Below, in pieces: positions 37,344-53,342 of a DNA stretch of 64,000 nucleotides. Below the pieces are notes generated by a model that worked only from the letters and a program-made list of their open reading frames with translations, ran no database searches and was not told the origin of the DNA. The position numbers and the translations under genes are program-made. Location of the stretch: positions 1 through 64,000 of IMG/VR virus record IMGVR_UViG_3300034104_003795; one strand, written 5' to 3'. How positions within the stretch are numbered: position 1 is the first letter of the stretch; the number at the start of each line of letters is the position of its first letter.

Positions 37344-37649
37344 TTATATTGTGTTTAAATAATGTACCAATGATTCGCCAAAAAGTTCCATATCATGTAA
37401 TGTTGCTTGATATACAACATCTTCTATAATATCTCCAGTAGAATCATTCATAAGTTTTATATCATAGGTAAGTTCACTCCATTCATCATTTAATAAACCT
37501 TGCCTAAATATAACCAATGTTATTGTTCGTTTACCATCTTTATGTCTGGCCTGCAAAGCATAATGTTCTTTACCCGCATCGGTTCTACCAATCTGCCAAT
37601 CACCATACCATTGGTTTTGTATCTTCTTAAAATTTTCTATTGTTAGCAT
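37344..37649 (-). CDS. MLTIxN-family paralogue A1
   Basis: MLTIENFKKI..W..HYAL..LVIFR. Confidence 0.7.
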   Translation of the reverse strand: MLTIENFKKIQNQWYGDWQIGRTDAGKEHYALQARHKDGKRTITLVIFRQGLLNDEWSELTYDIKLMNDSTGDIIEDVVYQATLHDMELFGESLVHYLNTI

Positions 37650-37651
37650 AA

Positions 37652-38122
37652 TTAAAAAGGTATTACTGGATGGTATTTATCAACTATTTCTTCTACCATT
37701 CCCCAAAAGTTTTTATAATTCAAATCATGCCCTCTAAACCAACCTCTATAATCCCATTCACCTTTATCATCGTTAATATACACTTGATACATCATTTCTG
37801 GATAATATGGTACAGGTGCAACTTGAAGTTCTCTACCCAAAGTAATATATACTCTCAATTTTTTATCTTCTCTATGTACAAGTTGAAATGTATATACTTC
37901 TTCCGATTCATCCGCAGATAGAATATCCCATCCCCAAAAAATCATCGTAGTAAGTTCTTTATCGTAATTTTGTATATGTAATTTTTTCTTTTTCATATTT
38001 GGTTCTTTTGGTGTAACTGTTACTATAACCTTTCCATAGTTTTTAGGATTGATTGGTTTACTATATCCCTTTCTAATAAGTTGGTTAGGTCTAAATCCAC
38101 CTTTTAATTTATTTATTCTCAT
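37652..38122 (-). CDS. MLTIxN-family paralogue A2 (family domain starts at Met 37996)
   Basis: LHIQNYDK..WDI..VYTF..ITLGR. Confidence 0.65.
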   Translation of the reverse strand: MRINKLKGGFRPNQLIRKGYSKPINPKNYGKVIVTVTPKEPNMKKKKLHIQNYDKELTTMIFWGWDILSADESEEVYTFQLVHREDKKLRVYITLGRELQVAPVPYYPEMMYQVYINDDKGEWDYRGWFRGHDLNYKNFWGMVEEIVDKYHPVIPF

Positions 38123-38123
38123 A

Positions 38124-38432
38124 TTACATTGATGCCTTTAAGCAACTACTAAACGTTCTCATCACATTTGTAAATTTTCCAAACCATTTCGCAGTTATAA
38201 TATGAATTGGACAATTAGGATAGTTTAATCGGTATTCCCATGCCTTCTCAATATCATTATAATGCCCAATCTTACTTACCTCAATCCAAATATAACGGTG
38301 TACACCGGAACTATCATCTCTGAATTGAAATCTATAATTTGTATCCGTTTCAATAGCCTCAGTACAAATAAATCTTTCTTTATGAAACATCGCTGTTACT
38401 ATCTTATCGTAATTTTGTATTATTAGTTTCAT
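38124..38432 (-). CDS. MLTIxN-family paralogue A3
   Basis: MKLIIQNYDK..NYRF..EYRL. Confidence 0.65.
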   Translation of the reverse strand: MKLIIQNYDKIVTAMFHKERFICTEAIETDTNYRFQFRDDSSGVHRYIWIEVSKIGHYNDIEKAWEYRLNYPNCPIHIITAKWFGKFTNVMRTFSSCLKASM

Positions 38433-38436
38433 TCAT

Positions 38437-38745
38437 CTATTTTTTATGTTCTGATTGAATATAACATTCCATCATCAACCAAAATTGCTCCTTATCTTTA
38501 AATTGAGAAAGTGGTAGTTGCCCTTTCCAAATTATATTCGTATAAGAACGATACATAACACTAACCTCAACTTTACCATTTTTAATTTCTCTCCCTAATT
38601 GTACCGCAGCATGTGTAGTATTACCATCAATACATTTCAATTTAAATGTATAATACTGATTGGTTTCTTGTGCAAAATATATTACCCAATTTTGTATTAG
38701 ATAATTCTTTAAATCTGCGTAATTACTAATATCTAACTTTTTCAT
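38437..38745 (-). CDS. MLTIxN-family paralogue A4
   Basis: LDISNY..WVI..YYTF..VQLGR. Confidence 0.65.
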   Translation of the reverse strand: MKKLDISNYADLKNYLIQNWVIYFAQETNQYYTFKLKCIDGNTTHAAVQLGREIKNGKVEVSVMYRSYTNIIWKGQLPLSQFKDKEQFWLMMECYIQSEHKK

Positions 38746-38753
38746 TTATTATA

Positions 38754-39056
38754 TTATCTTTGTAACCCACCCATTATTTCGGTGAATTTGTTCACTAAAT
38801 TATTTATATCTTTTATATAGTCAAGCGTTACCGCATATCCTATTGGTTTATCATCTAATGTAAATTTATATTCTCCACTACTTTCAGCAATTCTATTAAG
38901 AGATAATTTCCTTACATCATCTATTTTACCTGTTAAAGGGTTTTTTCTTAACAATACGAAGTGATACCAATTGTCAGTTTCACTAATACTATCCACCAAC
39001 CAATGTTTGTCAAACGCATATTGGTTTAATTTATTTACATTTAATATTGTTAGCAT
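38754..39056 (-). CDS. MLTIxN-family paralogue A5
   Basis: MLTILNVNKL..WLV..WYHF..LSLNR..EYKF. Confidence 0.7.
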   Translation of the reverse strand: MLTILNVNKLNQYAFDKHWLVDSISETDNWYHFVLLRKNPLTGKIDDVRKLSLNRIAESSGEYKFTLDDKPIGYAVTLDYIKDINNLVNKFTEIMGGLQR

Positions 39057-39057
39057 G

Positions 39058-39333
39058 TTATATTAATTCATCTATTAAAAATCTTACAAACTCATCTCTA
39101 TCTCCCATACACTCTATTGGTAGATAATGTTCTTTTTGTGTTTCTAAACAATAGACATGATAATCACCATGCTTTGTTTTCTTCCTATCAATACAAAGGT
39201 TAAACATATCAAAAGGTGAACCATTGTGTATTGTCTTTATATAGTAGATATCATCTCCTATTGACAAGTTATGTATCTTCCAATGGCCTATATACTTACC
39301 AGCCAATGTATTTATGTTTTGTATTGTTAGCAT
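39058..39333 (-). CDS. MLTIxN-family paralogue A6
   Basis: MLTIQNINTL..WKI..IYYI..LCIDR..DYHV. Confidence 0.7.
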   Translation of the reverse strand: MLTIQNINTLAGKYIGHWKIHNLSIGDDIYYIKTIHNGSPFDMFNLCIDRKKTKHGDYHVYCLETQKEHYLPIECMGDRDEFVRFLIDELI

Positions 39334-39334
39334 T

Positions 39335-39655
39335 TTATATCTTTTCTTTGTTCATTAAAATATATTCCAATTGGTTAATCATATTATCTTTATCGGCTAT
39401 GAAATCTGCGGTGACACATACATCGGTTCGTTTTGAATCAAATATGAAGAAGTACGATAAGTTAGGTGAACCAACACCTCTAATACCAGTTCTCTCCAAC
39501 ATAATCTTATGTCTTGTTGTGAATCCACTCCCATCCCAATCCTTAACCAATTCAAATATGTAAGTATCGGGTCTACCTTCATATATCAGTTGTATTGTCC
39601 AACCATCTGCCAAAGGTCTCCCTTCTAATTTCAATATGTTTTCTATTGTTAGCAT
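39335..39655 (-). CDS. MLTIxN-family paralogue A7
   Basis: MLTIENILKL..WTI..TYIF..IMLER. Confidence 0.7.
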   Translation of the reverse strand: MLTIENILKLEGRPLADGWTIQLIYEGRPDTYIFELVKDWDGSGFTTRHKIMLERTGIRGVGSPNLSYFFIFDSKRTDVCVTADFIADKDNMINQLEYILMNKEKI

Positions 39656-39656
39656 C

Positions 39657-40037
39657 TTAAATTAAATTTTGGTCTTTAGCCCATCTCATTATCACCTTGG
39701 TTGCGTACATTTCTAAATTGTTTTGGAATAGTTTCATATCCTTTATTTGTGATATCTTTAACCAATCATCACTATCCATTAAATTATTTTCCATTTGGTA
39801 TATTCCTTTTTCATCCGGCGTTCTACGAAGATAGATACAAAGTGGTACATCATAATCCGAAACGGCTTTATATTCAAATCGGTATGATTCATCCGTCTCA
39901 CCTGTTACTGCAGTTACATCACCGGGAAACTCAATAACTCGCTCACACTCCCATTCTAATAATTCAGAAGGGACGTACAAGTTTTGAAGTTTTATTTTAG
40001 TACCTACTAATTTTTCTATGTTCTTTATTGTTATCAT
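39657..40037 (-). CDS. MLTIxN-family paralogue A8
   Basis: MITIKNIEKL..WEC..SYRF..IYLRR..IYQM. Confidence 0.7.
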   Translation of the reverse strand: MITIKNIEKLVGTKIKLQNLYVPSELLEWECERVIEFPGDVTAVTGETDESYRFEYKAVSDYDVPLCIYLRRTPDEKGIYQMENNLMDSDDWLKISQIKDMKLFQNNLEMYATKVIMRWAKDQNLI

Positions 40038-40405
40038 CCGAATACTAAATTTTTAATATCATCATATTGTTTAATACTAGCACCATTCAAACTATTTTTT
40101 ACAATATACACACCAAACCTTCTCAACGAGCCCATCATTACTCTTTTAGAATTAAAGGAATTTGACCTAACTCTTAAAGGATACGCCATATCTTTGGAAT
40201 GATTAACTAAATAACAACCCCAACCCAATTCTTTTGGATGGGCTGAACTTCTCATAATGATAAGATAACAAATGTGGTTCTCTATACCATCGTTGTACAT
40301 AAACTCAATAGCATACAAATCTCTTTGAGCAACACAATATATTACCGATATCTTATCATCGGTCCATCCACCTAACTTTTCAACACCATCAATAGTTAAT
40401 CTCAT
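40034..40405 (-). CDS. MLTIxN-family paralogue A9 (divergent)
   Basis: MRLTIDGVEKL..LYAI..LIIMR. Confidence 0.6.
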   Translation of the reverse strand: MRLTIDGVEKLGGWTDDKISVIYCVAQRDLYAIEFMYNDGIENHICYLIIMRSSAHPKELGWGCYLVNHSKDMAYPLRVRSNSFNSKRVMMGSLRRFGVYIVKNSLNGASIKQYDDIKNLVFG

Positions 40406-40414
40406 ATTATACGT

Positions 40415-40507
40415 TTAGCAGGATATCAATAACATTAATAAGAGTATAAGCAAATACACTCCTAACATTTTCATTGTAGTCCAATCGTTTTTCTTTTTAG
40501 TTTTCAT
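40415..40507 (-). CDS. 30-aa peptide that is essentially a lipoprotein signal ending at the lipobox Cys
   Basis: MKTKKKNDWTTMKMLGVYLLILLLMLLISC-stop. Confidence 0.4.
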   Translation of the reverse strand: MKTKKKNDWTTMKMLGVYLLILLLMLLISC

Positions 40508-40856
40508 CCCAATACTTTTTACCTTTACGAACAACCTCATGCATACAAGCGATGAAGTATCCAAATTTCTTTATATCATCTACATCCAAATACTCAATCG
40601 TTACACCATGCAATCCCATCCAAAACAATTCGTACTTACCAGATACGTTTGGGTTTCGGTAAAGATAAATTTTGAAACTATCTTCCCATTGTTTATATGG
40701 ATTATTGGTTTTGGTGATGAAAGGTATTGCCGGAAAATGGAATACATACGCACTCCCATTAACTATCTCACCTTTCTCTACCGTTATCTTTTCAATAGTA
40801 CGATTGTGGAAATGGTGACCGGTAAGTTTGTTGATACCTTCTATGTTTAAGACCAT
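40497..40856 (-). CDS. MLTIxN-family paralogue A10
   Basis: MVLNIEGINKL..AYVF..IYLYR..KYEL. Confidence 0.65.
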   Translation of the reverse strand: MVLNIEGINKLTGHHFHNRTIEKITVEKGEIVNGSAYVFHFPAIPFITKTNNPYKQWEDSFKIYLYRNPNVSGKYELFWMGLHGVTIEYLDVDDIKKFGYFIACMHEVVRKGKKYWDEN

Positions 40857-41967
40857 ATACCTTTCAGTTTTAAAAAGTTAAGGAATGAAGATTTCGGAGA
40901 TACAGTCGAAAAATCATATTGGTCGTTGAGGTAATTTGCTTTGATAGTACTTTCCGGGTCTACATACGATTGAGAAACCTTCAACTCCGCCTTCCATTGT
41001 TGGTATTGAGGATTTAGCATAGTAGTTGTTCTTTCGTTTTCCAAGACCTCATACGCTTGGACATCATTGTAGTTGTTATAAGTTGTACTCATAATAAGGG
41101 TTTTATAATATAAATTAATCTAAATAGTTATCAAATAGTAGGTATATCGTCCATACTACACCGAATACCAATACACCTGCTATAAAGGCAATGGAAACCG
41201 GTGGTATTAATAGGAATACCTTAAATGGCCGTTCCTTTAACCATCTCTTATCAGTATCGGAGAATATAAATTGAATACCTAATGCTGATAGGAAGTTTAA
41301 TAGGAATAGGATAAGGAATAGTAATACCATTATTTCTTTGATTTAGTACGTTTAGTAGAAGCGGGTTTAGTTTCTTCTACAATCCCTGTGTTATCTGATG
41401 CCGTAGGGATTGTATCATCTATAAACTGACCACCATACGGAAAGAATTGTTTCCCACTAATACTGATGGAATGGATACGTCCAACTTTTCCTTTGATATG
41501 TGATTCGGATGGGTTTTCGGAATAGTACACACCATCTACTAACATCTTACCTTCTCTAACTTTAAAACTTTTCATAATCTTTAATTTTTGTTTTTATAAT
41601 GAATAATTGTTTATACTAAATAATTTTGTTGAACGAACTTTAAGATATTGGTTCTATCCTTACCCGATACACCTTTGAATGATTTGAACGAATAGATATC
41701 ATCCGCCCAATACTTTGTCATAGTGTTGGTATGTGTAGGACGTACCTCAAAGAAACGTACAAAGAAGTAATTGGGTTCACCACCGAATTCACTTTTGATA
41801 CTAATAGGTACATATACTACCTCGCAACTATCCGAAGGAATCTTTGTTACTTCATCTAACCATATATCAATAGGTTTAGAGAAATGTGAAAACCTCTCTA
41901 TCTCATTGTAGAACCTTTTCCAAGTACTCTTACTTAACTTAATTGAATCTACATACTTCATAGCCAT
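40847..41967 (-). CDS. four small hypothetical CDSs (40847-41092; 41115-41330 two-TM; 41330-41575; 41611-41967)
   Basis: Packed ORFs with AT-rich initiation regions. Confidence 0.55.
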
Positions 41968-41986
41968 AATCTTAATTTTTATTTTA

Positions 41987-42310
41987 TTACTTTGTGTTTA
42001 ATGCGGGTTTGTGTTTCTTAACCAATTCCATCTCTCTAATGTGAGCGGCCTCTTTACCTCTTACTACATCTAATACCGATACTTCATATACCAATTCTAA
42101 ATCATCAATGTAGTTGAACATATCCATATACAATTTCCAATCCCAATTTTCCCTTCTCGCTCTACTAAAATGTTTTTGTAACCGAACCTTTGCGGAACGA
42201 AGGAACGCCCGACCGGTTGAAGCCGTAATACCAATATATTCGTTACCATTGAAGGTATTTGTAATAAGGTATATAATATGATTCCTATCTGTACGTTTCT
42301 TCCTACTCAT
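41987..42310 (-). CDS. GIY-YIG endonuclease-family protein (start MSRKKRTDRNH)
   Basis: HIIYLITNTFNGNEYIGIT..RLQKH..REMELV..LNT; promoter at 42332-42363. Confidence 0.8.
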   Translation of the reverse strand: MSRKKRTDRNHIIYLITNTFNGNEYIGITASTGRAFLRSAKVRLQKHFSRARRENWDWKLYMDMFNYIDDLELVYEVSVLDVVRGKEAAHIREMELVKKHKPALNTK

Positions 42311-43098
42311 ATCTAACTTAACTTTTATACCTAAAATTACGAAAATTAATTGAGACCACCAAATTCTACCTAAAAGTTCTCGATTGGAAATCAACCCTTT
42401 ATAGATATATTTTAACCCCATACATAAGTCATTGACCGTCAACCAAGTATATATTAACCCCTTTCCGTTCCATTTTAACCCTATGAACCCCTAAACCATA
42501 CCTTTACCCTACCCATCCAAAATAACCCCAAGAAACCCCCTCGAAATGATTCATATATACGGCTATACTGTACAACCCACTGGTACCCCAATCCTAACCT
42601 ATTGATTGTCAATGAGTTATAACCAATTGATAATGAAGGGGTTATATATAGGGAATATCCACCATACCAATAAGGACGGATACAATAAAGACAGGTACAA
42701 TAGTAATAAAGACTATATACCATTAGGGGTAATATATAAAAATCTCGTATAGCGAAAAACTTGGGCTCGATACGAGAAGGGGTTAGGGGGCCCTCTAATA
42801 AAAAAATATTTTCTACGGTTCCAAGAAATTCAGTCCCCTACAGTCCCTATGGCGCCTACGTTCCAGAGGATTGGTATGCATGTATATATGTGTGTCCTCT
42901 ACAATCCTTATGGCGCCTACGTTGCGTGAGATTGTGTTTTTGATTGAAGTAAAATCTTTTTTGTTAAGGTAGTCCGTCCATGTGGGTAAGTTATAGACAC
43001 AAGAAAGGGGACCCGATTCCCAGTCAGTCCCCTCAGTCAACTTGCTCATTTAATAAACGTCAAATCACCAAACACTCCTCATTCAAGAGGATAATATT

Positions 43099-44282
43099 TT
43101 ATTTATTCATATAGTCCAATCCTATGTAGATATCGAACCATTGATTTATAACTCTATACTTTAGCCCCATTCCTTTACTATCATAATCTGTATAATCAGG
43201 TCCAGCTACCGCCTTCACTTCATTATATAGTGCTTCCGCATCTTCTTTGTGTATGGCACATAGGGCGTGTATTTTTGCTTTAATACTAGCTTCGTGTCTC
43301 ATACCTACTTCCCATACCGAGTGGCTATCTGACATCATATAGGACCAATCATGCTCATTCACTAACTGCATTAGGTCACTTCTCATTGTATTACTTATAC
43401 TCATATACTTAATTTTTTATAATAAATAAAATGTTACTGTCTCAGCTTTCCGCCAGGGTATATCATTTTGGGTACCGGGTCTATATGCATTACCCAGCAC
43501 AGCCTTTCGGTTACTATGTCTACCACGTGGACGGACACGGCCACCACCACAGGTTGCAGATAGTAACTTCTTTATAGATAATATCTGGATTTCGGACTCA
43601 AACTTTACAGTCAATAATTTTTCACTCATTGTATAAGGGGTTTATGAATTAATAAGAATAAGCCTTTGTACTAGCTTCTTCCATCTCTGCCAAATAGGCT
43701 TTACCATTGGCTGTACCCCAATATGATTTAGGGATACTATTATCGTATGGATTTGTACGCACAATACGTTCAATCACTTCCGCTTCCAACTCATTCGAGC
43801 GTAGAAAACCATTCACCAATTTTTCCATAAGGTCAGAACGTGTCTCACGTCTGTCCAACTTATTGTATGCGGCCAAGGCCATAACTAATGTTTTCAACTC
43901 TTTATTTGAGAAAGCCGATACTAACAGGTCACAATTTTGATTATACATATAGATAATTTAAGGGGTTTAAAAATTACTTCAAAAGGTATTTAGAACACAT
44001 ACCGAAACCAGCAGACTGTAAGTCCGATTTGATTTCCTTATGGAACTTTTTAGGGAACTTACCCATTGAAACCGGATACTCTCTCAAGATTGAATTGATC
44101 TTGGTTGTTTCAGATTTGAAAAGGGAAAGGAACTCTCTAGCCTCATTGAAGGCTTTACGAGTCTTACATTGGATACGGTGGGTATTACCCAAGAAGTCAG
44201 TATATTCTACTGATACGTTAAAACGGGGGTTTTCACTCATTTTAGAGGCTGAGAAACTCTTAAAGGGATTTTGCGTATTCAT
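43099..44282 (-). CDS. four small early hypothetical CDSs (43099-43404; 43417-43629; 43649-43948; 43974-44282)
   Basis: Downstream of host-type promoter 44306-44337. Confidence 0.55.
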
Positions 44283-44305
44283 ATCTTATCATTTTTATTA
44301 CATAA

Positions 44306-44640
44306 TAAAGATAGGGGTATTTTCCGAGCTGGCCAAACTTTTTGGGACTTATTTTAAAAATTCTTGCTTGAGAATCAATGACTTATGTAAGGGGTTGAAT
44401 ATCAATGACTTATAAAACGTTGGTTTTCAATGAGTTACGATTCAGTATAGATTAGGGGTATTTCACCCAGCCCCTACACAGATTCCAGAAGACCTGTCCA
44501 GAAAATGTGGATAACTTGATAAAAAACGGGTAAAACTACACAGAAAAATGTTCAAAATATAATATGTAGCATGTTAGTGTGTTAATTAGTATATTAACCC
44601 CACCAGTCCATCTGGGCCCAGGTCCCGCGGGACTTGTGGT
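44306..44640. promoter_or_regulatory. non-coding control region: promoter, three dyads, DnaA-box match, GC palindromes
   Basis: Dyads 44361-44437; TGTGGATAA 44506-44514; CTGGGCCCAG and GTCCCGCGGGAC 44612-44633. Confidence 0.55.
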
Positions 44641-44684
44641 ACTTTGGGAACATCAGCGAGGTACATTGGGTACATTAGGGACAT

Positions 44685-44709
44685 AAAAAAACCGGTCACA
44701 TCGGACCGG
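44685..44709 (-). terminator. intrinsic terminator
   Basis: CCGGTC-ACATCG-GACCGG with A7. Confidence 0.7.
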
Positions 44710-44734
44710 CTAATTATTTACTAACCTATCTTAA

Positions 44735-45801: not shown

Positions 45802-46269
45802 TTATTTTGTAACTAACAATGCGTTAAATGGATTTCTATCTACAACCTCAACGGCTGCTATACCAAGGTCTGCTAACTCATCAGCTACTTTGGTTAAACC
45901 TTTCGCTACGATGTTAAAACCGTGTACCTCATCAATAGCAATCTTTGCGTACTCTAAATTCACATACCTACGTCCGCTAAGGTCATCCATAATCTTTGCC
46001 GGTCCCATTGTGATTTGAACCATCTCTGGAAACTTCTCATTACTTACATCCGATATTGCGCAGTTTAAGTACTTAATGTGCGGTAACGGGTTCTTTTTAC
46101 TACCAGCTTTAAAACCTTCTCTTAATGCTTGGATGGTCTTAATACTCTTAGCCTTCTTTGTAGCGGGCTTCTTTGCTGTTTTCTTTACAACCTTTTTAGT
46201 GGCTGCTTTCTTAACTACTTTTTTAGCTACCTTTTTAGGTGCTGACTTCTTTGTGACTTTCTTATTCAT
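45802..46269 (-). CDS. protein with histone-H1/HU-tail-like Lys/Ala N-terminus
   Basis: KKVTKKSAPKKVAKKVVKKAATKKVVKKTAKKPATKKAK. Confidence 0.65.
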   Translation of the reverse strand: MNKKVTKKSAPKKVAKKVVKKAATKKVVKKTAKKPATKKAKSIKTIQALREGFKAGSKKNPLPHIKYLNCAISDVSNEKFPEMVQITMGPAKIMDDLSGRRYVNLEYAKIAIDEVHGFNIVAKGLTKVADELADLGIAAVEVVDRNPFNALLVTK

Positions 46270-46297
46270 ATCTTATTAAATTAAAGGGGTTATTAAA

Positions 46298-47143
46298 TTA
46301 CTTCACCATACCAATACGCTTCCAACTACCATTCCATTCCTCACCATTCAGGTACCAATTCCAATTCTTTTGTTTGATGTGTACGCCGGGTATACCATTC
46401 AGACGTTCTTTTGTAGTGTTTGAGGACCATCCAGCGTTTGTTATACTCAATACTCCTAGCTCGTCAATAGTTGCAATAGTATTACCATGCAATCTGAGCT
46501 TATATATACCATAGGACTCTTCTACACTCATATTAGATTTGCGGAAGGTCTCTTTACTTAAAAACTTGTCAATAGATTCTTTTGTGATTTTTCTCATAAT
46601 AAGGGGTTTAACGGATTACTTAACAATTTCAACCATACTCAAAGGTACGTTAAATGTACCAATACCAAATCGGACTTTACAACGGGTACGATTGATTTCA
46701 ATTACTGAACCAGTCGAACCTTGTACTCTGGGTGAATTCACTTTAACGTTGTCACCAACTCTTAATTGGTTTTTAACTTCATACGCCCTATCTAATCGAG
46801 ATTCTTTTAATAGGGATACTACATAGGAATTCAACAACTTCAAGTCAAGTGAACTCATTTTTTGAATTTCTGCACGCATTTTTGAACTAATCATATAATA
46901 AGGGGTTTAAATTTTAATACTTAATGTGAACACCATTCTGGTCATCCACAACTTTTGGATACCCGATGTTCGGCTCTCTAATAACAAAAGCAACGAAAAC
47001 GATACCAAACCAAAGGATTGTCTTTAACATAGGGGTTATTTAGAAGTTTTGAAATAGTACTCATAAACGGTTTTACCTAAAACATATCCAAAAAGTGAAA
47101 CTCCACTTATAAGGACGAACTCTAAAATTGTAATGTGTGTCAT
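46298..47143 (-). CDS. four early CDSs (46298-46597; 46616-46894 KOW-like; 46914-47030 and 47036-47143 TM micro-proteins not in track)
   Basis: LRVGDNVKV..GSVIEINRTRCKV; hand-translated 38-aa and 35-aa hydrophobic peptides. Confidence 0.55.
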
Positions 47144-47162
47144 ATCTCTTAATCTTATATAC

Positions 47163-47522
47163 CAAAACTACACCTATTTTTTAATATATCCAAGCTTTTT
47201 ATCCACTTTTTTTGGTCCCCAAAGCGTAACTCGTTGATACTCAATCAAGAATTTTTTGGTAAAAAGCTGGATCTTGGTAAGTCATTGATTATCAACCACT
47301 TGCGGCAGCCGGACTTAACATAATATAATTTATAGGCGATTTAGGGGTTTTTCCATCGTAACACATTGATTATCAACGAGTTGTGGACTTAACATAATAT
47401 CCGTTATTGGGGGTCTCACTCAAAGGACGTACCCCGCCCTCCACTCCCTAAAGTTACGAAAAATACCTGATATTTCCAACAGGTGTGGATAACTTTTTAA
47501 TTAGTTGATAATCAATTCGTTA
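47163..47522. repeat. iteron-like repeats, four dyads and DnaA-box matches between two host-type promoters
   Basis: CATTGATTATCAAC..GGACTTAACATAATAT twice (47283-47326, 47364-47400); TGTGGATAA 47484-47492. Confidence 0.6.
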
Positions 47523-47949
47523 TATGCCATCTCTAAACAATCCAACCAGTCTGCCGTGTCACCATCGGTTTCCAGTTGTCTTTTTATTTGTTTGGCATAA
47601 CTAACTAACTCTTCGTCCATACCTAATTGGACAGCCCGTTGAATCATTTGAAGTTCTGTAAGCATATATAACATTATAGGTCAGTATCGGACCACTCATT
47701 TATTTTATCTAAACACCTTTGTAGTTTTAGAAGTTCCCTTTCGGCATCCTCTATTTGTTTACGTTTGTCCGCCATAATCGTTTGGACCAATGTAGTGGCG
47801 GCGTATTTCCTACCCCAGACTTTCGGATAATGGAAATTTGAACCAATAGGGATGTATTCACCTCTTATCAATGCATACCTGTCACCTCTTATGACAACCG
47901 CATCGTATTCACCCTCACCATTTTCCATTAACCTCATATCGTTATGCAT
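47501..47949 (-). CDS. two small CDSs (47501-47665 54 aa not in track; 47674-47949)
   Basis: Hand translation MLTELQMIQRAVQLG..; start of the second moved to avoid overlap. Confidence 0.5.
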
Positions 47950-48013
47950 GGCACGATTTGATGCCACTTGCTCACCTGGTTTGACATGAGTATTTTTATG
48001 AGTCTTTTTTTCT

Positions 48014-48370
48014 TTACTTTCCTTTCTTTCTGTATGCACGTTTGACAAGTTTTTCGTTTTCCCTTGCTTGTATTTCGTATGGGTTATTTTTGTACCCGTA
48101 TTTAATTTGATAATGATTGTACCAGCGGTATGACTGTTGTGCATGTGTCCATTCGTGTAGAATTGTTTTCTGAACCGCCACCATTCGTTTACATTGTGCT
48201 AAATTAATCCAAATTGTTTTTTCCCAATCGTAGTAACCACATTCGGCATCCTCTTTGGTATCCCAGTAAAAAGCAATTGCTCCACATCTGCTTTCACCCA
48301 GTTTTTCATGAGCCCAATTCCATAAACGGTTACAATCAAACTTCATTCCTATTTTATTACTTACACGCAT
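48014..48370 (-). CDS. HExxH zinc metallopeptidase-like protein
   Basis: TILHEWTHAQQ..NPYEIQAR; promoter at 48409-48440. Confidence 0.7.
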   Translation of the reverse strand: MRVSNKIGMKFDCNRLWNWAHEKLGESRCGAIAFYWDTKEDAECGYYDWEKTIWINLAQCKRMVAVQKTILHEWTHAQQSYRWYNHYQIKYGYKNNPYEIQARENEKLVKRAYRKKGK

Positions 48371-48816
48371 AAATATCTTTTAGATTTTAAATAGATTAAT
48401 TAGATATACAAATATACGAAAAAAAATCCATTCCACCAAATCTAATGCCAGTAAGGGTTACAGTAGTATAGTGTATTAAATTCATATAAAAAAATTTTTT
48501 TGCGTGGAAAAGAATTCGTATATACCTCACATTATGACTGACATATACTAATTTTGACATCGTTTTTATTGTGAAGTGGTAAAAAGTGGGATTTTGTGTT
48601 AAAGTGTGTTTTCATTGACACCCATCGGTTTTCAATTACTTTGTACTATCAAATTACATTTCATTAAAAATTGTGACACTTACCCCTTAAAACGTAATTA
48701 AATTTTAGTAGTATCAAAATAGGGTTTTATCAAGTTTCAACGCAAGTCCCAACACCCTTTTGCTCACCATCGTACTATCAATATTCGGACACAAAAAAGG
48801 GACCATTTAAGTATCC

Positions 48817-49011
48817 CTATTCTATTTCGTTTGTTGTACTATTGGTAGCGAGTAACTCGTATTTTTTATTGATTAGGTTTCGTATTTGGGTACAAAGCTC
48901 GTATTCCTCAATCCCAATACATTCTTTTAATAACCATTGGAGACGTTGTATTTTATGTTGAAGTTCAAGGCGTTCCCTTTGTGTTAAACCGTGTGTGTGA
49001 TTAGTATCCAT
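48817..49011 (-). CDS. small protein with UVR-like motif
   Basis: CIGIEEYELCTQIR. Confidence 0.45.
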   Translation of the reverse strand: MDTNHTHGLTQRERLELQHKIQRLQWLLKECIGIEEYELCTQIRNLINKKYELLATNSTTNEIE

Positions 49012-49071
49012 AACATTGTAATTAATGCGGTTATCAATAGGAGCTCGGACCCATTACCTTTAATACGCCCC

Positions 49072-49534
49072 TTATTTATTCTTTTTGTTTTCATTTGGTT
49101 TATGTTCGTAATCCCATTCAGTTCCCCTACGGATTACGATATCTTTTTTGTTTTCTTTTGTACCGTATTCCTTACTATATACCAATATCTTTAAGGTTAT
49201 GTAGAACCCTATAAAACCTATTAGAGCAAGGATATCAAAGAGGTTTATTTCATTACTCGGCATCTTCTATTCTATTGATTTGTTTTATTAGGTCTATTAC
49301 ACACCATACAGTCATTATACCTATTAACCCTATTACTATTCCCATAACTTATTTGTTTTTATTTTGTCTCCTTATTTCCCTATATATCAGTATTACTACT
49401 ATTAACGTTATTAATCCCATTATCTATTAGTCTTTGTTTATATCCTTATGATTTTCGTTTATGTATCTGTCTACTATATACTGACCTATTCCATACCCTA
49501 CTAACATTCCTATTACTATTACTACTATTAACAT
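49072..49534 (-). CDS. four single-TM micro-proteins (49072-49263; 49253-49345; 49349-49420; 49427-49534)
   Basis: MGIVIGLIGIMTVWCVIDLIKQINRIEDAE; MGLITLIVVILIYREIRRQNKNK; MLIVVIVIGMLVGYGIGQYIVDRYINENHKDINKD. Confidence 0.6.
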
Positions 49535-49567
49535 CTGTACTATAATTATTTTTATCTACGTCCGCTC

Positions 49568-50195
49568 TTATTCCCAAACAAACTCCCAACTCCTATCAGC
49601 TCTTTGAACACTTAAACGAAATGGACCAACTCTTGGATGTGTCCCTCTTATAACCCATTCGGTTGGAGTAGTTATCAATTCCCTATCTACAAAATCCGCT
49701 GGTATACACGCCTTGTAATGTTTCTCTATTGCTTCAAACCCCATACCAGCAGTAACTCCAAAACCCCCACCACCAGTGATATACCTTTCAAATGATTCTT
49801 GCCACCATGTATCCGTGTTTGTACTAAAATCTATTGCCATACTATTTGTTTTTAATTGTTTGTTATAAATATATATTCAAATCTTATTTTTATTTCCTAT
49901 TAATCCATTCTCTATTAATCAAGGCAGACACTATCAAAAATTTTCCCTATCGACCCGAACACCGATTCACCGATACGATATATACTACAAGTACTGAATA
50001 TACTATATGTATTATACTATGTATTACTATTGTCCGATTTTATTTTCTTATAGTTCGGAAATTACTTGCACCCTTTGTTAGTTCCCTCAATTCCTTTACT
50101 TCATATAACAGGCAAAACATACCTATTGTAGCTACTATCATTAATATAAAGGTTATCCCCTCTAATATATCTTTTGTTTTTAGTTCGTTATTCAT
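49568..50195 (-). CDS. two CDSs (49568-49840; 50040-50195 TM peptide not in track)
   Basis: ATATTTATA at 49864-49872 upstream of 49840. Confidence 0.5.
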
Positions 50196-50198
50196 ATT

Positions 50199-50525
50199 TT
50201 ATTGATTTACTATATTTTTTATATGAGTGTCCAAGCAAAAAGTAAAACTACTTATGGTCCTCATATACTCTATATCCCATGCCGAACGTCCATGAAAGCT
50301 TTGTTTTACTAGTCCGGTCTCCATTACATACCCACCTATTGTTTTTACTCTATTCAATTTTATAGTCAACTCATCACGCCTAAAACCCCCGATTGTCCAA
50401 TAACCTACCCGTTTATGGATTACAAATATATAGTTTTGTTCACCTATAAACATTTCACCTATCCGCCATTCGGGTGTACCGGCAAACTTACTATTGAGTA
50501 TGTTTATGTTTTCTATTGTTAGCAT
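50199..50525 (-). CDS. MLTIxN-family paralogue B1
   Basis: MLTIENINIL..WRI..NYIF..IKLNR..GYVM. Confidence 0.7.
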   Translation of the reverse strand: MLTIENINILNSKFAGTPEWRIGEMFIGEQNYIFVIHKRVGYWTIGGFRRDELTIKLNRVKTIGGYVMETGLVKQSFHGRSAWDIEYMRTISSFTFCLDTHIKNIVNQ

Positions 50526-50526
50526 A

Positions 50527-50835
50527 CTATTCTTTTAACATTTTATCAATTAAGTTTCCTATAAAATACGGCGTTATTTGATGCATACTCAACCATCTAT
50601 TTACTTTACTTTGGTCAAAATCTTTATATAACCTATAAACGGGTTCGTTTCTGCCACTTACATATTGGCTCTCTCTATTCAAATAAAATACATTTTGTAC
50701 CTTACCGTTTACAGAAACAGCAAATGCATATACATCCTTATAAACATCGGTTGTTTCTATCGCTTCACTTATATACCATATGTTAATAGATGAACCCACA
50801 TTTATTATTTTATCTATGTTTTGTATTGTTAGCAT
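50527..50835 (-). CDS. MLTIxN-family paralogue B2
   Basis: MLTIQNIDKI..WYI..VYAF..FYLNR..VYRL. Confidence 0.7.
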   Translation of the reverse strand: MLTIQNIDKIINVGSSINIWYISEAIETTDVYKDVYAFAVSVNGKVQNVFYLNRESQYVSGRNEPVYRLYKDFDQSKVNRWLSMHQITPYFIGNLIDKMLKE

Positions 50836-51152
50836 AGTATATATTTGTTTACTAAAAATTCTATTGAGCTTACAAACTGTCTCATGTCCGATATATCCTT
50901 TGTTCTTAAATATATTCTACTCGTAGGATTACTATTATCATACATCGCGTAGGTTGTTTCCATATTAGGACCAAATACGTCCGAAGTTCTAAGTAAAACT
51001 AATAACTCGTCAGATTTTGATTTACGCGGACATCTTAAATGTATTTGATATGCTCTTTCATATTGAGTAGTATTTCTTATATAATATTCTACAACACGAT
51101 TCTTAACTATTGGTACATCTAATATCTTATATGTATTTTCTATTGTTAGCAT
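50829..51152 (-). CDS. MLTIxN-family paralogue B3 (start reassigned to 51152)
   Basis: MLTIENTYKI..AYQI..VLLR..TYAM. Confidence 0.7.
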   Translation of the reverse strand: MLTIENTYKILDVPIVKNRVVEYYIRNTTQYERAYQIHLRCPRKSKSDELLVLLRTSDVFGPNMETTYAMYDNSNPTSRIYLRTKDISDMRQFVSSIEFLVNKYILC

Positions 51153-51162
51153 ATTATTTGTT

Positions 51163-51486
51163 TTAATTACTGAAACTATGCAATTGACCACCCAATATAC
51201 CAACAAACATTTTCAATTGTAAGTAACCTTTTGTTAGTATTGTATAACCATTATCTTGGTCATTATACATTTTCCACTCACCTAACGTACTACTAAATTC
51301 ATTATATCTTAATAGTTTAAAGTTTACATACTTTGGATGCTTTACGCCAAATGTAGTACCATACTCAAATCTTACTTTAATAATATAATCATGCTTTTGT
51401 TCCTCTATACTCATTACTACCCAATGTGCATGTGGTGTATGTATTTTTTTTCCTACTATCTTTTGTATGTTTTTTATTTTTAGCAT
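51163..51486 (-). CDS. MLTIxN-family paralogue B4
   Basis: MLKIKNIQKI..WVV..DYII..FKLLR. Confidence 0.7.
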   Translation of the reverse strand: MLKIKNIQKIVGKKIHTPHAHWVVMSIEEQKHDYIIKVRFEYGTTFGVKHPKYVNFKLLRYNEFSSTLGEWKMYNDQDNGYTILTKGYLQLKMFVGILGGQLHSFSN

Positions 51487-51496
51487 ATATTATTTT

Positions 51497-51820
51497 TTAT
51501 ATATCGTATGAGGTATCAATCATTTCAGTCATTCGTTTTATCAATAACCTCTTATCACTTATAGTTTCAATTGGTATGTATGTTTTAATCTTATACATTC
51601 TTTGCATACCCGGCCCACCTGCTGATATTCCAAATTCATATCCAATTCCATGTAGGTTTTGTTTATTCAAAGCAAATATTTCTTTTGGGCCTTTTCTATT
51701 TTCAATTAAGATTAGGTATTCATCGGTGTCATCTATAATTTTGTCCACTACCCAATACATACCCATCTTATCATAAAACGAATCACTTATTAACCGTCCT
51801 CTATTTTCTATTGTGAGCAT
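51497..51820 (-). CDS. MLTIxN-family paralogue B5
   Basis: MLTIENRGRL..WVV..EYLI..FALNK..GYEF. Confidence 0.7.
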   Translation of the reverse strand: MLTIENRGRLISDSFYDKMGMYWVVDKIIDDTDEYLILIENRKGPKEIFALNKQNLHGIGYEFGISAGGPGMQRMYKIKTYIPIETISDKRLLIKRMTEMIDTSYDI

Positions 51821-52127
51821 ATATCATTCCAGTTTGTATGTGTAACTCTAATATGAAGTTTTTCATTGTAAGGTTTTCCGGCGTTACATAAACATTTTGT
51901 TTTAGTTTTGCCGATGTCATTTCATATCCCCTACTATTCCTTATAGTTCGCATCAATTTATATACAATACCATCGTTTATACTTGCCACATTGTTTTCCA
52001 TCAAAGGAAATACCCCAAAACTATAATGGTCATAATATGCTCTTGCGATACCAATTATAAACTTCCGTCCGCTACTCAATTGGAATTCCTTACCGTCTAT
52101 ATTTTGTATGTTTTCTATTGTCAACAT
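51801..52127 (-). CDS. MLTIxN-family paralogue B6
   Basis: MLTIENIQNI..HYSF..YKLMR..GYEM. Confidence 0.7.
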   Translation of the reverse strand: MLTIENIQNIDGKEFQLSSGRKFIIGIARAYYDHYSFGVFPLMENNVASINDGIVYKLMRTIRNSRGYEMTSAKLKQNVYVTPENLTMKNFILELHIQTGMIYAHNRK

Positions 52128-52730
52128 TCATTCCGTTTATTAGGTCTTTTAAAATAACATTCCAATTATCCGCATTGTCCATTACTACTCTTTGATATTG
52201 CTTTAATATCGTATCCCTTTGCTCCTTTGTTAATTCTACGTCTAATTCTTGCTCTATTCCTTTGATATCGTCTATTGTAACATTCATACGATTTATTTAT
52301 TTAGATATTGCTTTACTAATTATGTCCACAATCCTATTCAACCGCCATTCACTCTTTTTTTCTCTTATTGTTTTCGGTTCGTCATCCTTTGTATTGTTAT
52401 ATACATTGACGGATGTATTGTATTGACTTATTAAGGATTGATAATAGATTTGATGTAAGTGATGCGGGATGTTTGTAAAATCAGCTTCAACAGTTACAGG
52501 CATTTTAGTACCTGTTCCGTATATTTGTATTGAAGTTTTGATTTGTACTTTACCATTACCCTTCATTGTAAGGTGTCTACTATCCGTTGAAATGTTTATA
52601 CTCATCCGAAACTATTTAATACTTTTTTAATTACTCTTTTTACCATTCGTTGTGCCACAAATAATGCAATTAGTGCACCAACTCCGGCTCCTATTAAGAA
52701 GCCCCAAATAAATTGAAATTCTATACTCAT
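52090..52730 (-). CDS. three interspersed non-family CDSs (52090-52287; 52297-52605; 52602-52730 TM peptide)
   Basis: ORFs inside array B. Confidence 0.5.
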
Positions 52731-52735
52731 ATTTT

Positions 52736-53044
52736 TTATTTTAAAGATTCTAACATATCTTTTATCAAATCAGTCACATATACAGTGCCTAACTTCAAAT
52801 CCGGTTTATTTAATATCCTTCTAATTGGTATTCCACTTCCCGATTGATTAGACCAAAACCATAATTCATAAAGTGCCGAATCACTCTTACCTATTGCGGT
52901 TCGTTCTAAATTAACTTGCAATCGTAGGCCATTGGATTTTCTTAATTCAATTAGGTATGCACTATCCAATGTTACTACTTTACCTATTCTCCATTCACCT
53001 ACATCCTGTTTGTAAAGTTTTTCTATGTTTACTATTGTTAGCAT
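52736..53044 (-). CDS. MLTIxN-family paralogue B7
   Basis: MLTIVNIEKL..WRI..AYLI..VNLER..LYEL. Confidence 0.7.
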   Translation of the reverse strand: MLTIVNIEKLYKQDVGEWRIGKVVTLDSAYLIELRKSNGLRLQVNLERTAIGKSDSALYELWFWSNQSGSGIPIRRILNKPDLKLGTVYVTDLIKDMLESLK

Positions 53045-53045
53045 A

Positions 53046-53342
53046 CTAAATAAATGATTCTAAATGATTACTGAATATATCAATATTTTTCATATCGTCT
53101 CTGTGTATATACTTTTTTTCATTTCCACATTCTAATTTGTATTGGTGTCCAAGTTTAAACGGTGAAAAACTTCTGTCCAAAACTATTTTCTTGTCCCAAC
53201 CATTTTCAGTTTGCTCAATAAAAATTACATAGTGATTCAAATGTGGTCTTATTGAAGTTACAACCCATTCCATTGGACCGGCACTTCCGCTACCATGCAA
53301 TATAGTACCTAATAACTTTTTTTCGTTTTCTATTGTTAGCAT
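53046..53342 (-). CDS. MLTIxN-family paralogue B8
   Basis: MLTIENEKKL..WVV..HYVI..IVLDR..QYKL. Confidence 0.7.
   Translation of the reverse strand: MLTIENEKKLLGTILHGSGSAGPMEWVVTSIRPHLNHYVIFIEQTENGWDKKIVLDRSFSPFKLGHQYKLECGNEKKYIHRDDMKNIDIFSNHLESFI

What the first reader, a model, noticed from the sequence alone, without database searches (positions are those of the whole stretch)
37633..53342. Family members share near-identical 5' nucleotides (ATGCTAACAATA), a possible crossover site or RNA-level signal
Seen: the exact 12-mer ATGCTAACAATA opens 9 genes (starts 37649, 39056, 39333, 39655, 50525, 50835, 51152, 53044, 53342). Single-change or synonymous variants open those at 40037, 51486, 51820 and 52127, and many extend to ATGCTAACAATAGAAAA. 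The rest of each gene has diverged almost beyond recognition, yet the same synonymous codons (CTA ACA ATA) are kept, although TTA looks like the commoner Leu codon here. Inference: constraint at the nucleotide level. Short homology at each gene start would let recombination swap, delete or duplicate whole genes as cassettes. Alternatively it is a translation-coupling or regulator-binding element.
Basis: partly seen in the sequence, partly recalled or inferred. Interest (0 to 1): 0.75.

Follow-up and report, generated by a model that had tools for sequence, protein, structure and literature searches.

The report
Shared gene-start codons forced by restriction-site avoidance
Nineteen small paralogous genes of a freshwater jumbo phage mostly open with the same 12 bases, mainly because a conserved protein start (Met-Leu-Thr-Ile) can be spelled only this way if the phage uses A-ending codons and avoids the restriction site GTTAAC; the shared bases also serve as joints where whole genes are gained, lost or moved.

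Summary
ATGCTAACAATA opens 9 genes, with close variants at 4 more. All lie on the minus strand, and the motif occurs nowhere else in the 274-kb genome. The genes belong to a 19-member family of about 100-aa proteins with no annotation, arranged in two tandem arrays.

The codon anomaly is mostly the rare Leu codon CTA (8.6% of Leu genome-wide, 11 of 17 at codon 2). The common codon TTA would create GTTAAC in ATG-TTA-ACN. This genome has 2 GTTAAC sites against about 56 expected.

- In relatives that avoid GTTAAC, ATG-Leu-ACN starts never use TTA (0 of 101).
- Where codon 3 is not ACN, TTA is used in 10 of 32 starts.
- In relatives that tolerate GTTAAC, TTA is used in 9 of 12 starts.
- ACT at codon 3 would make the avoided word CTATAG.
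- A-ending codons are favoured at 5' ends across the genome.

The motif is the only all-A-ending, GTTAAC-free spelling of MLTIE.

A dedicated RNA or regulator signal is not supported. The crossover idea is partly supported. Three whole-gene indels between close relatives have their joints inside the motif, one bounded by a perfect 21-nt repeat. A one-gene cassette also sits in different neighbourhoods in two relatives. Some excess uniformity remains unexplained. The finding is of modest interest.

The parts
37344..40856 (-). Tandem array 1: 10 paralogues of the MLTIEN family (starts 40856, 40405, 40037, 39655, 39333, 39056, 38745, 38432, 38122, 37649). Spacers between genes are -4 to 8 nt, plus one of 91 nt.
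   Evidence: Alignment A1; family HMM on the six-frame translation of the genome; spacers.
50199..53706 (-). Tandem array 2: 9 paralogues (starts 53706, 53342, 53044, 52127, 51820, 51486, 51152, 50835, 50525). It is interrupted at 52128-52735 by non-family ORFs.
37638..37649 (-). Exact 12-mer ATGCTAACAATA at a gene start; extends to the 17-mer.
39045..39056 (-). Exact 12-mer at a gene start.
39322..39333 (-). Exact 12-mer at a gene start.
39635..39655 (-). Exact 12-mer, here part of the 21-mer ATGCTAACAATAGAAAACATA. This 21-mer is the single remaining copy of the direct repeat that bounds a 773-nt two-gene indel relative to locus L001.
40026..40037 (-). Variant ATGATAACAATA (Met-Ile-Thr-Ile). 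Its ATGA overlaps the stop of the upstream paralogue.
50514..50525 (-). Exact 12-mer at a gene start; extends to the 17-mer.
50824..50835 (-). Exact 12-mer at a gene start. The TAA inside ATGCTAA serves as the stop codon of the upstream paralogue (50829-51152).
51141..51152 (-). Exact 12-mer at a gene start; extends to the 17-mer.
51475..51486 (-). Variant ATGCTAAAAATA (Met-Leu-Lys-Ile).
51809..51820 (-). Synonymous variant ATGCTCACAATA.
52116..52127 (-). Synonymous variant ATGTTGACAATA (Leu = TTG, which does not create GTTAAC).
53033..53044 (-). Exact 12-mer at a gene start.
53331..53342 (-). Exact 12-mer at a gene start; extends to the 17-mer.
29394..29399 (.). One of only two GTTAAC sites in the whole 274-kb genome. 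It lies inside the plus-strand SusC/TonB-receptor-like gene. It is listed as context for the avoidance argument.

Best explanation
The window is the first 64 kb of a complete 274-kb, 33% GC jumbo phage from lake water. Its host is probably a member of the Bacteroidota, which do not use Shine-Dalgarno sequences; the host is inferred, not shown. The phage carries 19 paralogues of an unannotated family of about 100-aa proteins. The N-terminal peptide of this family, Met-Leu-Thr-Ile-(Glu/Lys/Gln)-Asn, is its best-conserved part, and it is also conserved in hundreds of metagenomic relatives.

The shared 12-17 bases are the spelling of that peptide that remains after two genome-wide pressures act on synonymous sites.

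1. A-ending codons are preferred in codons 2-8. This gives an A-rich, weakly folded start region. The preference leaves TTA or CTA for Leu, and only ACA, ATA and GAA for Thr, Ile and Glu.
2. Short palindromes that look like restriction sites are strongly avoided. ATG-TTA-ACN would contain GTTAAC (an HpaI-type site), so TTA is barred and CTA is the only A-ending Leu codon left. ACT-ATA-G would contain CTATAG. ATC-GAA would contain TCGA.

The result is ATG CTA ACA ATA GAA AA.

Shown here: the depletion of these words, the dependence of TTA use on sequence context, and the return of TTA in relatives that tolerate GTTAAC. Inferred: that host restriction enzymes cause the depletion, and that start-region accessibility causes the A-ending preference.

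As a by-product, the 12-21 identical bases are the only nucleotide homology among otherwise saturated paralogues. They therefore act as microhomology for unequal recombination, which adds, removes and relocates whole genes in the arrays. The joints are shown. The rates of these events, and any feedback by which recombination homogenises the motif, are inferred.
For: Protein-level conservation
- L2, I4 and N6 are at least 90% conserved in 82 diverse members.
- 462 cluster representatives match the family profile at E<1e-3, and those inspected start with MLTI-x-N.

Avoidance of GTTAAC and other palindromes
- GTTAAC: 2 observed against 56 expected. CTATAG: 2 against 39. GATC: 25 against 907. TCGA: O/E 0.31. 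The reversed control word CAATTG is not depleted: 244 against 191.
- The avoidance acts in other reading frames too. The Val-Asn codon pair GTT-AAC occurs once, against GTA-AAC 61 times and GTT-AAT 77 times. In non-family genes the context NNG-Leu-ACN is rare (15 cases) and uses TTA once, against 59% TTA in other contexts.
- Within the family in this genome, TTA is used only where it cannot form GTTAAC.

Unbiased scans of viral contigs (ATGYTN..., which accept any Leu codon), filtered with the family HMM
- In records that avoid GTTAAC, ATG-Leu-ACN starts use CTA 84, CTT 8, TTG 6, CTC 3 and TTA 0.
- In the same records, ATG-Leu-other starts use TTA in 10 of 32 (Fisher P=2e-7).
- In GTTAAC-tolerant records (40 sites in 164 kb; 16 sites in 117 kb), ATG-Leu-ACN starts use TTA in 9 of 12 (P=4e-11).
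- ACT at codon 3 occurs in 0 of 86 starts among relatives.

A-ending preference and start-region folding
- A-ending codons are 70% at codons 2-4 of non-family genes against 53% in gene bodies.
- Non-family genes with Leu at codon 2 use TTA in 7 of 12 and CTA in 1 of 12, so C at +4 is not a general preference.
- The native codons give a more open predicted start region than most synonymous variants in 8 of 9 genes (mean rank 13.7 of 71).

Recombination joints
- A 773-nt two-gene indel against L001 is bounded by a perfect 21-nt repeat of the motif.
- One-gene indels have joints at nt 18/19 of the ORF (L083 against L097) and within about 20 nt of the ATG (L066 against L040).
- A one-gene cassette is identical from its ATG to the next ATG but has different neighbours in L066 and L068.
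- The phage encodes its own RecA-family recombinase.
Against: Quantitatively the two pressures do not fully account for the uniformity.
- With 5'-end codon usage and rejection of avoided words, P(12-mer | MLTIE) is only about 0.12, yet 9 of 11 MLTI genes carry it.
- CTA is also 17 of 32 in ATG-Leu-nonACN starts of avoiding genomes, where TTA is allowed.
- Record G008 has 10 GTTAAC sites in 95 kb but no TTA in 10 MLT starts.
- In gene bodies the usual replacements for TTA in the G-Leu-AC context are CTT and TTG rather than CTA.

Other limits:
- Counts from relatives are not phylogenetically independent.
- The host and its restriction enzymes are unknown.
- The preference for an open start region rests on predicted folding only.
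- Gene-boundary joints are also what selection for intact genes would leave after random illegitimate recombination.
Confidence: 0.62

Rival explanations
1. The motif is kept because of recombination. Frequent unequal crossover or gene conversion at the gene starts homogenises the first 12-21 nt (concerted evolution). Lineages with the shared module gain and shuffle cassettes faster. On this view it is a coding-sequence analogue of the PeSL modules of T4-type phages.
For: - Three of three whole-family-gene indels between motif-bearing neighbours have joints in the motif.
- A cassette has been relocated with ATG-to-ATG boundaries.
- Array sizes differ widely among relatives, with 3 to at least 16 members per locus.
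- The residual uniformity is not explained by codon bias plus site avoidance, and CTA persists in non-ACN contexts.
- The phage encodes a RecA-family recombinase.
Against: - Homogenisation alone does not predict which codon wins. It also does not predict TTA being 0 of 101 in avoiders against 9 of 12 in tolerant genomes.
- Other indels in the same arrays use unrelated microhomologies such as GTAAATAA and GATAA.
- 12-21 nt is short for RecA-type exchange.
- Selection for evolvability is a second-order force.
- CTA/CTT variants do not visibly cluster by genome in the small sample.
Confidence: 0.2
2. The sequence is an RNA-level operator that overlaps the start codon. A phage or host RNA-binding protein (RegA-like), a small RNA, or a termination-reinitiation element would recognise AUGCUAACAAUA and co-regulate the family.
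For: - The motif overlaps the AUG of 13 co-oriented, tightly packed genes. Their spacers are mostly 1-10 nt, and three pairs overlap.
- Uniformity exceeds the simple expectation.
Against: - C at +4 is freely replaced by T in relatives that tolerate GTTAAC.
- CTT, TTG, CTC, ACG, ACC and ATT variants occur without any compensating change.
- The sequence upstream of the ATG is not conserved.
- There is no Rfam match in the window.
- The genome holds no antisense copy of the 17-mer with up to 2 mismatches.
- Every conserved base is accounted for by the peptide plus A-ending codons.
Confidence: 0.07
3. The codon choice ties the family to phage-encoded tRNAs. CUA and ACA are read by phage tRNA-Leu(UAG) and tRNA-Thr(UGU). 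AUA may be read by one of the three CAU tRNAs if it is an Ile2 type. Translation would then be timed or boosted by the supply of phage tRNAs.
For: The genome carries 26 tRNAs, including Leu(TAG), Thr(TGT) and three with a CAT anticodon.
Against: - The tRNA set is nearly complete and also includes Leu(TAA), so it does not single out CTA.
- Other conserved Leu columns of the same genes do not use CTA.
- TTA replaces CTA in GTTAAC-tolerant relatives.
Confidence: 0.04
4. Shared ancestry only: the 12-mer is an inherited relic that has not yet decayed.
For: The genes are paralogues. CTA persists after codon 3 has changed, as in ATGCTAAAA.
Against: - Paralogues share only about 20% amino-acid identity.
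- Synonymous sites at other conserved columns match ordinary codon usage.
- The context dependence and genome dependence of TTA use is not predicted by ancestry alone.
Confidence: 0.04

Closest known systems
Restriction-site (short palindrome) avoidance in phage genomes shaping local codon choice. The classic work of Sharp 1986 and Rocha et al. 2001 is cited from my own knowledge. Non-translational pressures on local codon usage are reviewed in PMC8410138 (found).
   Same: A 6-bp palindrome is depleted about 28-fold against the Markov expectation, in all reading frames. Synonymous codons that would create it are not used. The depletion and the codon choice vary together among related phages.
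   Different: Here the effect falls on one fixed position of a multigene family, because the conserved peptide Met-Leu-Thr places ATG, Leu and ACN side by side. It therefore produces a repeated identical 12-mer rather than scattered codon shifts. The cognate enzyme and the host are unknown.
Preference for A-rich, weakly structured 5' coding ends. It is especially relevant in Bacteroidia, whose ribosomes do not use Shine-Dalgarno pairing (PMC9976891 abstract). Work on Kozak-like A-rich start contexts in Flavobacterium is cited from my own knowledge.
   Same: There is a genome-wide excess of A-ending codons at codons 2-8. The native codons give a more open predicted start region than most synonymous alternatives.
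   Different: The bias in this family is stronger than the genome average: about 90% A-ending at codons 2-7 against 70%. No expression data exist for this phage.
PeSL mobile regulatory cassettes of T4-type phages (PMC2839356, PMC4122927; found).
   Same: Short conserved sequences flank small genes of unknown function in hyperplastic regions. They coincide with the ends of insertions, deletions and replacements between closely related phages.
   Different: As I recall from the literature, PeSLs are intergenic promoter-plus-stem-loop modules of tens of bases. The motif here is 12-21 nt of coding sequence at the start codon, in arrays with spacers of 1-10 nt. There is no room for a promoter or terminator.
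Conserved gene-boundary or linker sequences proposed as recombination points in lambdoid phage mosaics (modular theory; Susskind and Botstein 1978, Juhala 2000, Clark 2001; cited from my own knowledge).
   Same: Mosaic joints fall at gene boundaries, in short stretches of identity.
   Different: Here the identity arises inside paralogous coding starts of one family, and its sequence can be explained by codon-level constraints.

Membership tests
Restriction-site avoidance | The word is depleted relative to a composition-aware expectation. | tested here: met
   GTTAAC is seen 2 times against 56 expected (maximal-order Markov). The reversed control word CAATTG is seen 244 times against 191 expected.
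Restriction-site avoidance | The depletion is independent of reading frame and of the gene family. | tested here: met
   The Val-Asn pair GTT-AAC occurs once against about 19 expected from the marginal frequencies. In non-family genes NNG-TTA-ACN occurs in 1 of 15 cases.
Restriction-site avoidance | The codon choice relaxes in relatives that do not avoid the site. | tested here: met
   TTA is used in 9 of 12 ATG-Leu-ACN starts in tolerant records and in 0 of 101 in avoiders. One intermediate record (G008) does not fit.
Restriction-site avoidance | The host has a cognate restriction enzyme. | not testable with these tools
   The phage comes from lake-water metagenomes. The host is unknown.
PeSL-type mobile regulatory cassette | An intergenic module holding an early promoter and a stem-loop terminator. 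| tested here: not met
   The motif is coding sequence. Spacers between the family genes are -20 to 10 nt, apart from 91 nt and 608 nt within the arrays and 9342 nt between them. The sequence upstream of the ATG is not conserved.
PeSL-type mobile regulatory cassette | The module bounds indels and replacements between closely related phages. | tested here: met
   Three whole-gene indels and one relocated cassette have joints at the motif.
PeSL-type mobile regulatory cassette | Excised circular intermediates. | not testable with these tools
   Only short assembled contigs were available. The joints from read laying had short sides under 30 nt and were inconclusive.
RegA-like translational operator | A shared sequence overlapping the AUG of several mRNAs. 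| tested here: met
   13 gene starts carry the motif.
RegA-like translational operator | The operator bases are conserved beyond what coding requires, across relatives. | tested here: not met
   C at +4 changes to T in GTTAAC-tolerant relatives. Third positions vary (ACG, ACC, ATT, CTT). Upstream bases are not conserved.
RegA-like translational operator | A cognate RNA-binding repressor gene. | not tested
   No search for such a gene was made.
Diversity-generating retroelement (considered because of the hypervariable gene bodies) | A reverse transcriptase in the genome. | tested here: not met
   No RVT_1 match in the complete genome.

The most novel reading that the evidence does not exclude
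The shared gene start may be a maintained recombination module, a coding-sequence counterpart of the PeSL cassettes. Gene conversion and unequal crossover at the 12-21-nt start would homogenise it. They would also drive cassette-like gain, loss and shuffling of a hyperdiverse family of about 100-aa proteins in freshwater jumbo phages of probable Bacteroidota hosts. The family has a fold with no informative structural match and may act in host takeover or counter-defence. Restriction-site avoidance would then only dictate which spelling is used.
Probability: 0.2. Interest if true: 0.6.

Novelty: new member of a known kind. Interest (0 to 1): 0.35.

Why it matters
This is a clean worked example of how selection unrelated to the gene's own function can mimic a nucleotide-level signal. 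Restriction-site avoidance and a preference for an open translation start freeze synonymous sites at a conserved peptide. In this way, identical codons arise across paralogues that are otherwise saturated with change.

The resulting microhomology then channels structural evolution of a large tandem gene family. This may be a general way for phage hyperplastic regions to acquire cassette-like behaviour without a dedicated element.

The work also flags an abundant, unannotated, structurally unmatched family in freshwater jumbo phages that deserves functional study.

Tried and rejected
- Pfam and PHROGs scans of 10 family members gave nothing significant.
- An Rfam scan of the window gave no match.
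- A megablast search of the region against phage records gave no match.
- The search for related loci with the full alignment failed because there was no conserved stretch. It worked with a single protein.
- I compared synonymous conservation by codon position between the window and its nearest relative G006. It was uninformative because the two are about 93% codon-identical everywhere.
- Laying contigs from four lake metagenome runs on array 2 gave ten joints. All but two have an end within about 20 nt of a family gene start. Eight of the ten have a short side of at most 30 nt (all have 52 nt or less), and they are as well explained by the repeat itself. I judged this inconclusive.
- Structure searches against PDB, AFDB clusters, BFVD and the ESM Atlas found only unnamed viral clusters or sub-threshold matches, so no function can be assigned.
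- A diversity-generating retroelement, considered as the source of the divergent gene bodies, was rejected because there is no reverse transcriptase.
- An antisense small RNA partner was rejected: the genome holds no plus-strand copy of the 17-mer with up to 2 mismatches.
- I checked whether the +1-frame stops inside the motif (TAA and TAG in A-TGC-TAA-CAA-TAG) explain CTA. They do not, because TTA would give the same stops. The TAA is used as the upstream gene's stop only once.
- RecT and ERF recombinases are absent. A RecA-family recombinase is present.

Full report
**Context**

The window is the first 64 kb of a single-contig virus record of 273,997 bp with 33% GC. CheckV rates it 100% complete. 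Near-identical sequence is held by many lake-water metagenome runs.

Of 236 long non-overlapping ORFs, 233 lie on the minus strand.

A SusC/TonB-dependent-receptor-like gene lies at 28749-32009 on the plus strand (Pfam OMP_b-brl_4, CarboxypepD_reg, Plug). The only phage hits are weak ones to Flavobacterium phages. Both point to a Bacteroidota host; this is an inference. Bacteroidia ribosomes do not use Shine-Dalgarno pairing (PMC9976891 abstract). Accordingly, no Shine-Dalgarno-like sequence precedes the genes studied here.

**The observation**

- It is absent from the remaining 210 kb of the genome on both strands.
- With up to one mismatch there are 13 hits against 1.04 expected.
- The four variant starts are as described.
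- The 17-mer is exact in five genes.

**The genes**

An alignment and a profile HMM show 19 paralogues of about 91-156 aa. Ten lie at 37344-40856 and nine at 50199-53706. There are no others in the genome. Pairwise identity is about 18-21%.

The genes are packed tightly. Most are 1-10 nt apart and three pairs overlap.

There is no Pfam or PHROG match. An AlphaFold2 model built on an 82-sequence alignment is confident (pLDDT 90.5). It shows a short N-terminal helix, a five-stranded sheet and a C-terminal helix. It has no informative match in PDB, AFDB clusters, BFVD or the ESM Atlas beyond unnamed viral clusters.

The family is large in metagenomes. 462 representatives of 50%-identity clusters match the profile at E<1e-3. 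The N-terminus MLTI-(E/K/Q)-N is its best-conserved segment: L2, I4 and N6 are at least 90% conserved.

**Is there synonymous constraint?**

Genome codon usage:

| Codon | Share of its amino acid |
|---|---|
| Leu TTA | 53% |
| Leu CTA | 8.6% |
| Thr ACA | 41% |
| Ile ATA | 36% |

At the aligned positions the family uses CTA in 11 of 17, ACA in 12 of 13 and ATA in 16 of 18.

Three other conserved Leu columns of the same genes use CTA in 0 of 12, 1 of 14 and 0 of 12. Conserved Tyr, Phe and Arg columns also follow ordinary usage. Synonymous sites elsewhere in these genes are therefore randomised.

ACA and ATA are much less surprising than they first appear.
- Non-family genes use ACA in 67% and ATA in 50% of cases at codons 2-8.
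- The family bodies use ATA in 58% of cases.
- A-ending codons make up 70% at codons 2-4 against 53% in gene bodies.

The true anomaly is CTA, with P of about 1e-7 against any background. It is not a general preference at +4. Non-family genes with Leu at codon 2 use TTA in 7 of 12 and CTA in 1 of 12.

**Why CTA**

ATG-TTA-ACN contains GTTAAC. This genome has 2 GTTAAC sites against 56 expected. It is among the most depleted six-base palindromes, together with:
- TACGTA (0 against 28)
- CTATAG (2 against 39)
- GTATAC (5 against 65)
- CTTAAG (7 against 49)
- GGTACC (16 against 68)

GATC (25 against 907) and TCGA (O/E 0.31) are also depleted.

The depletion does not depend on the family.
- The codon pair GTT-AAC occurs once, while GTA-AAC occurs 61 times and GTT-AAT 77 times.
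- In non-family genes the context NNG-Leu-ACN is rare (15 cases) and uses TTA once, against 59% TTA in other contexts.

Within the family, the four members that do use TTA at the aligned Leu all have a context that cannot form GTTAAC, for example AGA-TTA-ACT.

Enumerating the synonymous variants of the consensus shows the following:
- TTA creates GTTAAC.
- ACT creates CTATAG when followed by ATA and a codon beginning with G.
- ATC-GAA contains TCGA.

ATG-CTA-ACA-ATA-GAA is therefore the only all-A-ending spelling of MLTIE that avoids GTTAAC.

**Comparative test**

Two scans of viral contigs used patterns that accept any Leu codon (ATGYTNACN...). They were followed by HMM filtering, whole-record GTTAAC counts and retrieval of further arrays. 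After removing duplicates the counts were as follows.

| Set | Context | Leu codon counts |
|---|---|---|
| Records and loci that avoid GTTAAC (0-3 sites per 48-274 kb where counted) | ATG-Leu-ACN | CTA 84, CTT 8, TTG 6, CTC 3, TTA 0 |
| Same records | ATG-Leu-other | TTA 10 of 32 (Fisher P=1.9e-7) |
| Records that tolerate GTTAAC (40 sites in 164 kb; 16 in 117 kb; three smaller loci) | ATG-Leu-ACN | TTA 9 of 12 (P=3.7e-11) |

Four of the 16 GTTAAC sites of record G005 are family gene starts. ACT at codon 3 is never seen among 86 relatives.

The C at +4 is thus dispensable wherever GTTAAC is tolerated. This argues against a sequence-specific RNA or protein-binding signal.

**What remains unexplained**

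- With 5'-end usage and rejection of avoided words, the expected frequency of the 12-mer given MLTIE is about 0.12 (0.013 without those corrections), yet 9 of 11 genes carry it.
- CTA is also 17 of 32 in starts of avoiding genomes where codon 3 is not ACN.
- Record G008, with 10 GTTAAC sites in 95 kb, still has no TTA start.

Possible contributors:
- Stronger selection for an open start region in this family. The native codons rank in about the lowest fifth of opening energies among 71 synonymous variants, and they are more open than the mean of the variants in 8 of 9 genes.
- Descent from ACN-bearing ancestors.
- Homogenisation by recombination.

**Recombination**

The nearest relative is one 89.5-kb viral contig, IMGVR_UViG_3300032326_001208 (loci L001 and L022). 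It is 98-100% identical to the window over most of both arrays.

It has three extra segments in array 1. It also has patches of about 25-30% divergence inside some gene bodies. These patches begin 50-95 nt after the ATG and end near the stop codon.

The largest indel is 773 nt and spans two whole family genes. In the relative it is bounded by two perfect copies of ATGCTAACAATAGAAAACATA. The window keeps one copy, at 39635-39655, with the left flank of the first copy and the right flank of the second. This is the signature of exchange between direct repeats.

In two other pairs of close relatives:
- A one-gene deletion has its joint at nt 18/19 of the ORF (L083 against L097).
- A one-gene indel has its joint within the first 20 nt or so (L066 against L040).

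A one-gene segment is 98% identical from its ATG to the next gene's ATG but has different neighbours in L066 and L068.

Other indels in the same arrays use unrelated microhomologies: GTAAATAA near stop codons, and GATAA. The phage encodes a RecA-family recombinase but no RecT or ERF.

These data show that the motif is used as a joint. They do not show that this use is why the motif is conserved. Selection for intact genes would also enrich gene-boundary joints.

**Other rivals**

- No Rfam family matches the window.
- There is no antisense copy of the motif in the genome.
- There is no reverse transcriptase.
- The phage tRNA set (26 tRNAs) includes Leu(TAG), Thr(TGT) and three CAT tRNAs. It also includes Leu(TAA), so it does not single out CTA.
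- Contigs from four lake metagenome runs laid on array 2 gave joints that cluster at family gene starts. Their short sides are mostly under 30 nt, so they are as well explained by the repeat itself.

**Verdict**

The identical codons are best explained as the forced spelling of a conserved N-terminal peptide under restriction-site avoidance and a preference for A-ending 5' codons. The resulting microhomology serves secondarily as a joint for whole-gene rearrangements.

This is a new instance of known phenomena. The closest known parallels are palindrome avoidance acting on codon choice (PMC8410138) and PeSL-mediated shuffling in T4-type phages (PMC2839356, PMC4122927). The PeSL definition is not met here, because the motif is coding sequence and there is no room between the genes for a promoter or terminator.

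Noticed in passing
Genome G000:C1:85230-92009 and 171074-171460 (outside the window): The phage carries a cluster of 26 tRNA genes, including Leu(TAG), Leu(TAA), Thr(TGT) and three with a CAT anticodon. It also carries a tmRNA gene with the tag peptide DVELSTWTFDDVMSFMGADLAVAA (ARAGORN).
   Followed up: partly
window 28749-32009 (+): A SusC/TonB-dependent-receptor-like ORF of 1086 aa is one of only three long plus-strand ORFs in the genome. It contains one of the only two GTTAAC sites (29394). It looks like a recently acquired host-type gene that has not yet adapted to the site avoidance.
   Followed up: partly
Whole genome G000: Several restriction-type words are extremely depleted: GATC 25 against 907 expected, TCGA O/E 0.31, CATG O/E 0.36, TACGTA 0 against 28, CTATAG 2 against 39, GTATAC 5 against 65, CTTAAG 7 against 49, GGTACC 16 against 68. 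This suggests exposure to many restriction systems and no protective DNA modification.
   Followed up: partly
Whole genome G000: 233 of 236 long non-overlapping ORFs lie on the minus strand of a 274-kb genome.
   Followed up: no
window 37363-37600, 38440-38740, 39340-39575, 50900-51065, 51270-51300: Between the window and its 98-100% identical relative (L001 and L022), divergence of about 25-30% is confined to the bodies of a few family genes. It starts 50-95 nt after the ATG. This looks like allelic cassette replacement or very fast local evolution. There is no reverse transcriptase in the genome, so it is not a diversity-generating retroelement.
   Followed up: partly
window 52090-52287 (-) and its upstream region to about 52330: The non-family ORF just upstream of the family gene at 52127 is replaced or heavily diverged in the close relative L022. 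Identity resumes about 13 nt before the family gene's ATG. A similar ORF follows the relocated cassette in L068.
   Followed up: no
window 37344-40856 and 50199-53706; alignment A2; model m59dc9fa7106a: The MLTIEN family has no Pfam or PHROG entry. 462 cluster representatives in metagenomes match its profile. It forms arrays of up to at least 16 copies in related contigs. Its confident predicted fold has no informative structural match.
   Followed up: partly
window 41987-42442 (-): An ORF between the two arrays shows, by eye, a GIY-YIG-like motif (IYLITN...NEYIGIT). This suggests a homing-endonuclease-type gene. Pfam gave no hit at E<=0.001, so this is unverified.
   Followed up: no
L001:10905-11160: The close relative has an extra segment of about 250 nt between two family genes. 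It encodes a small hydrophobic ORF that is absent from the window. The joint shows only a GATAA/ATAA microhomology.
   Followed up: no
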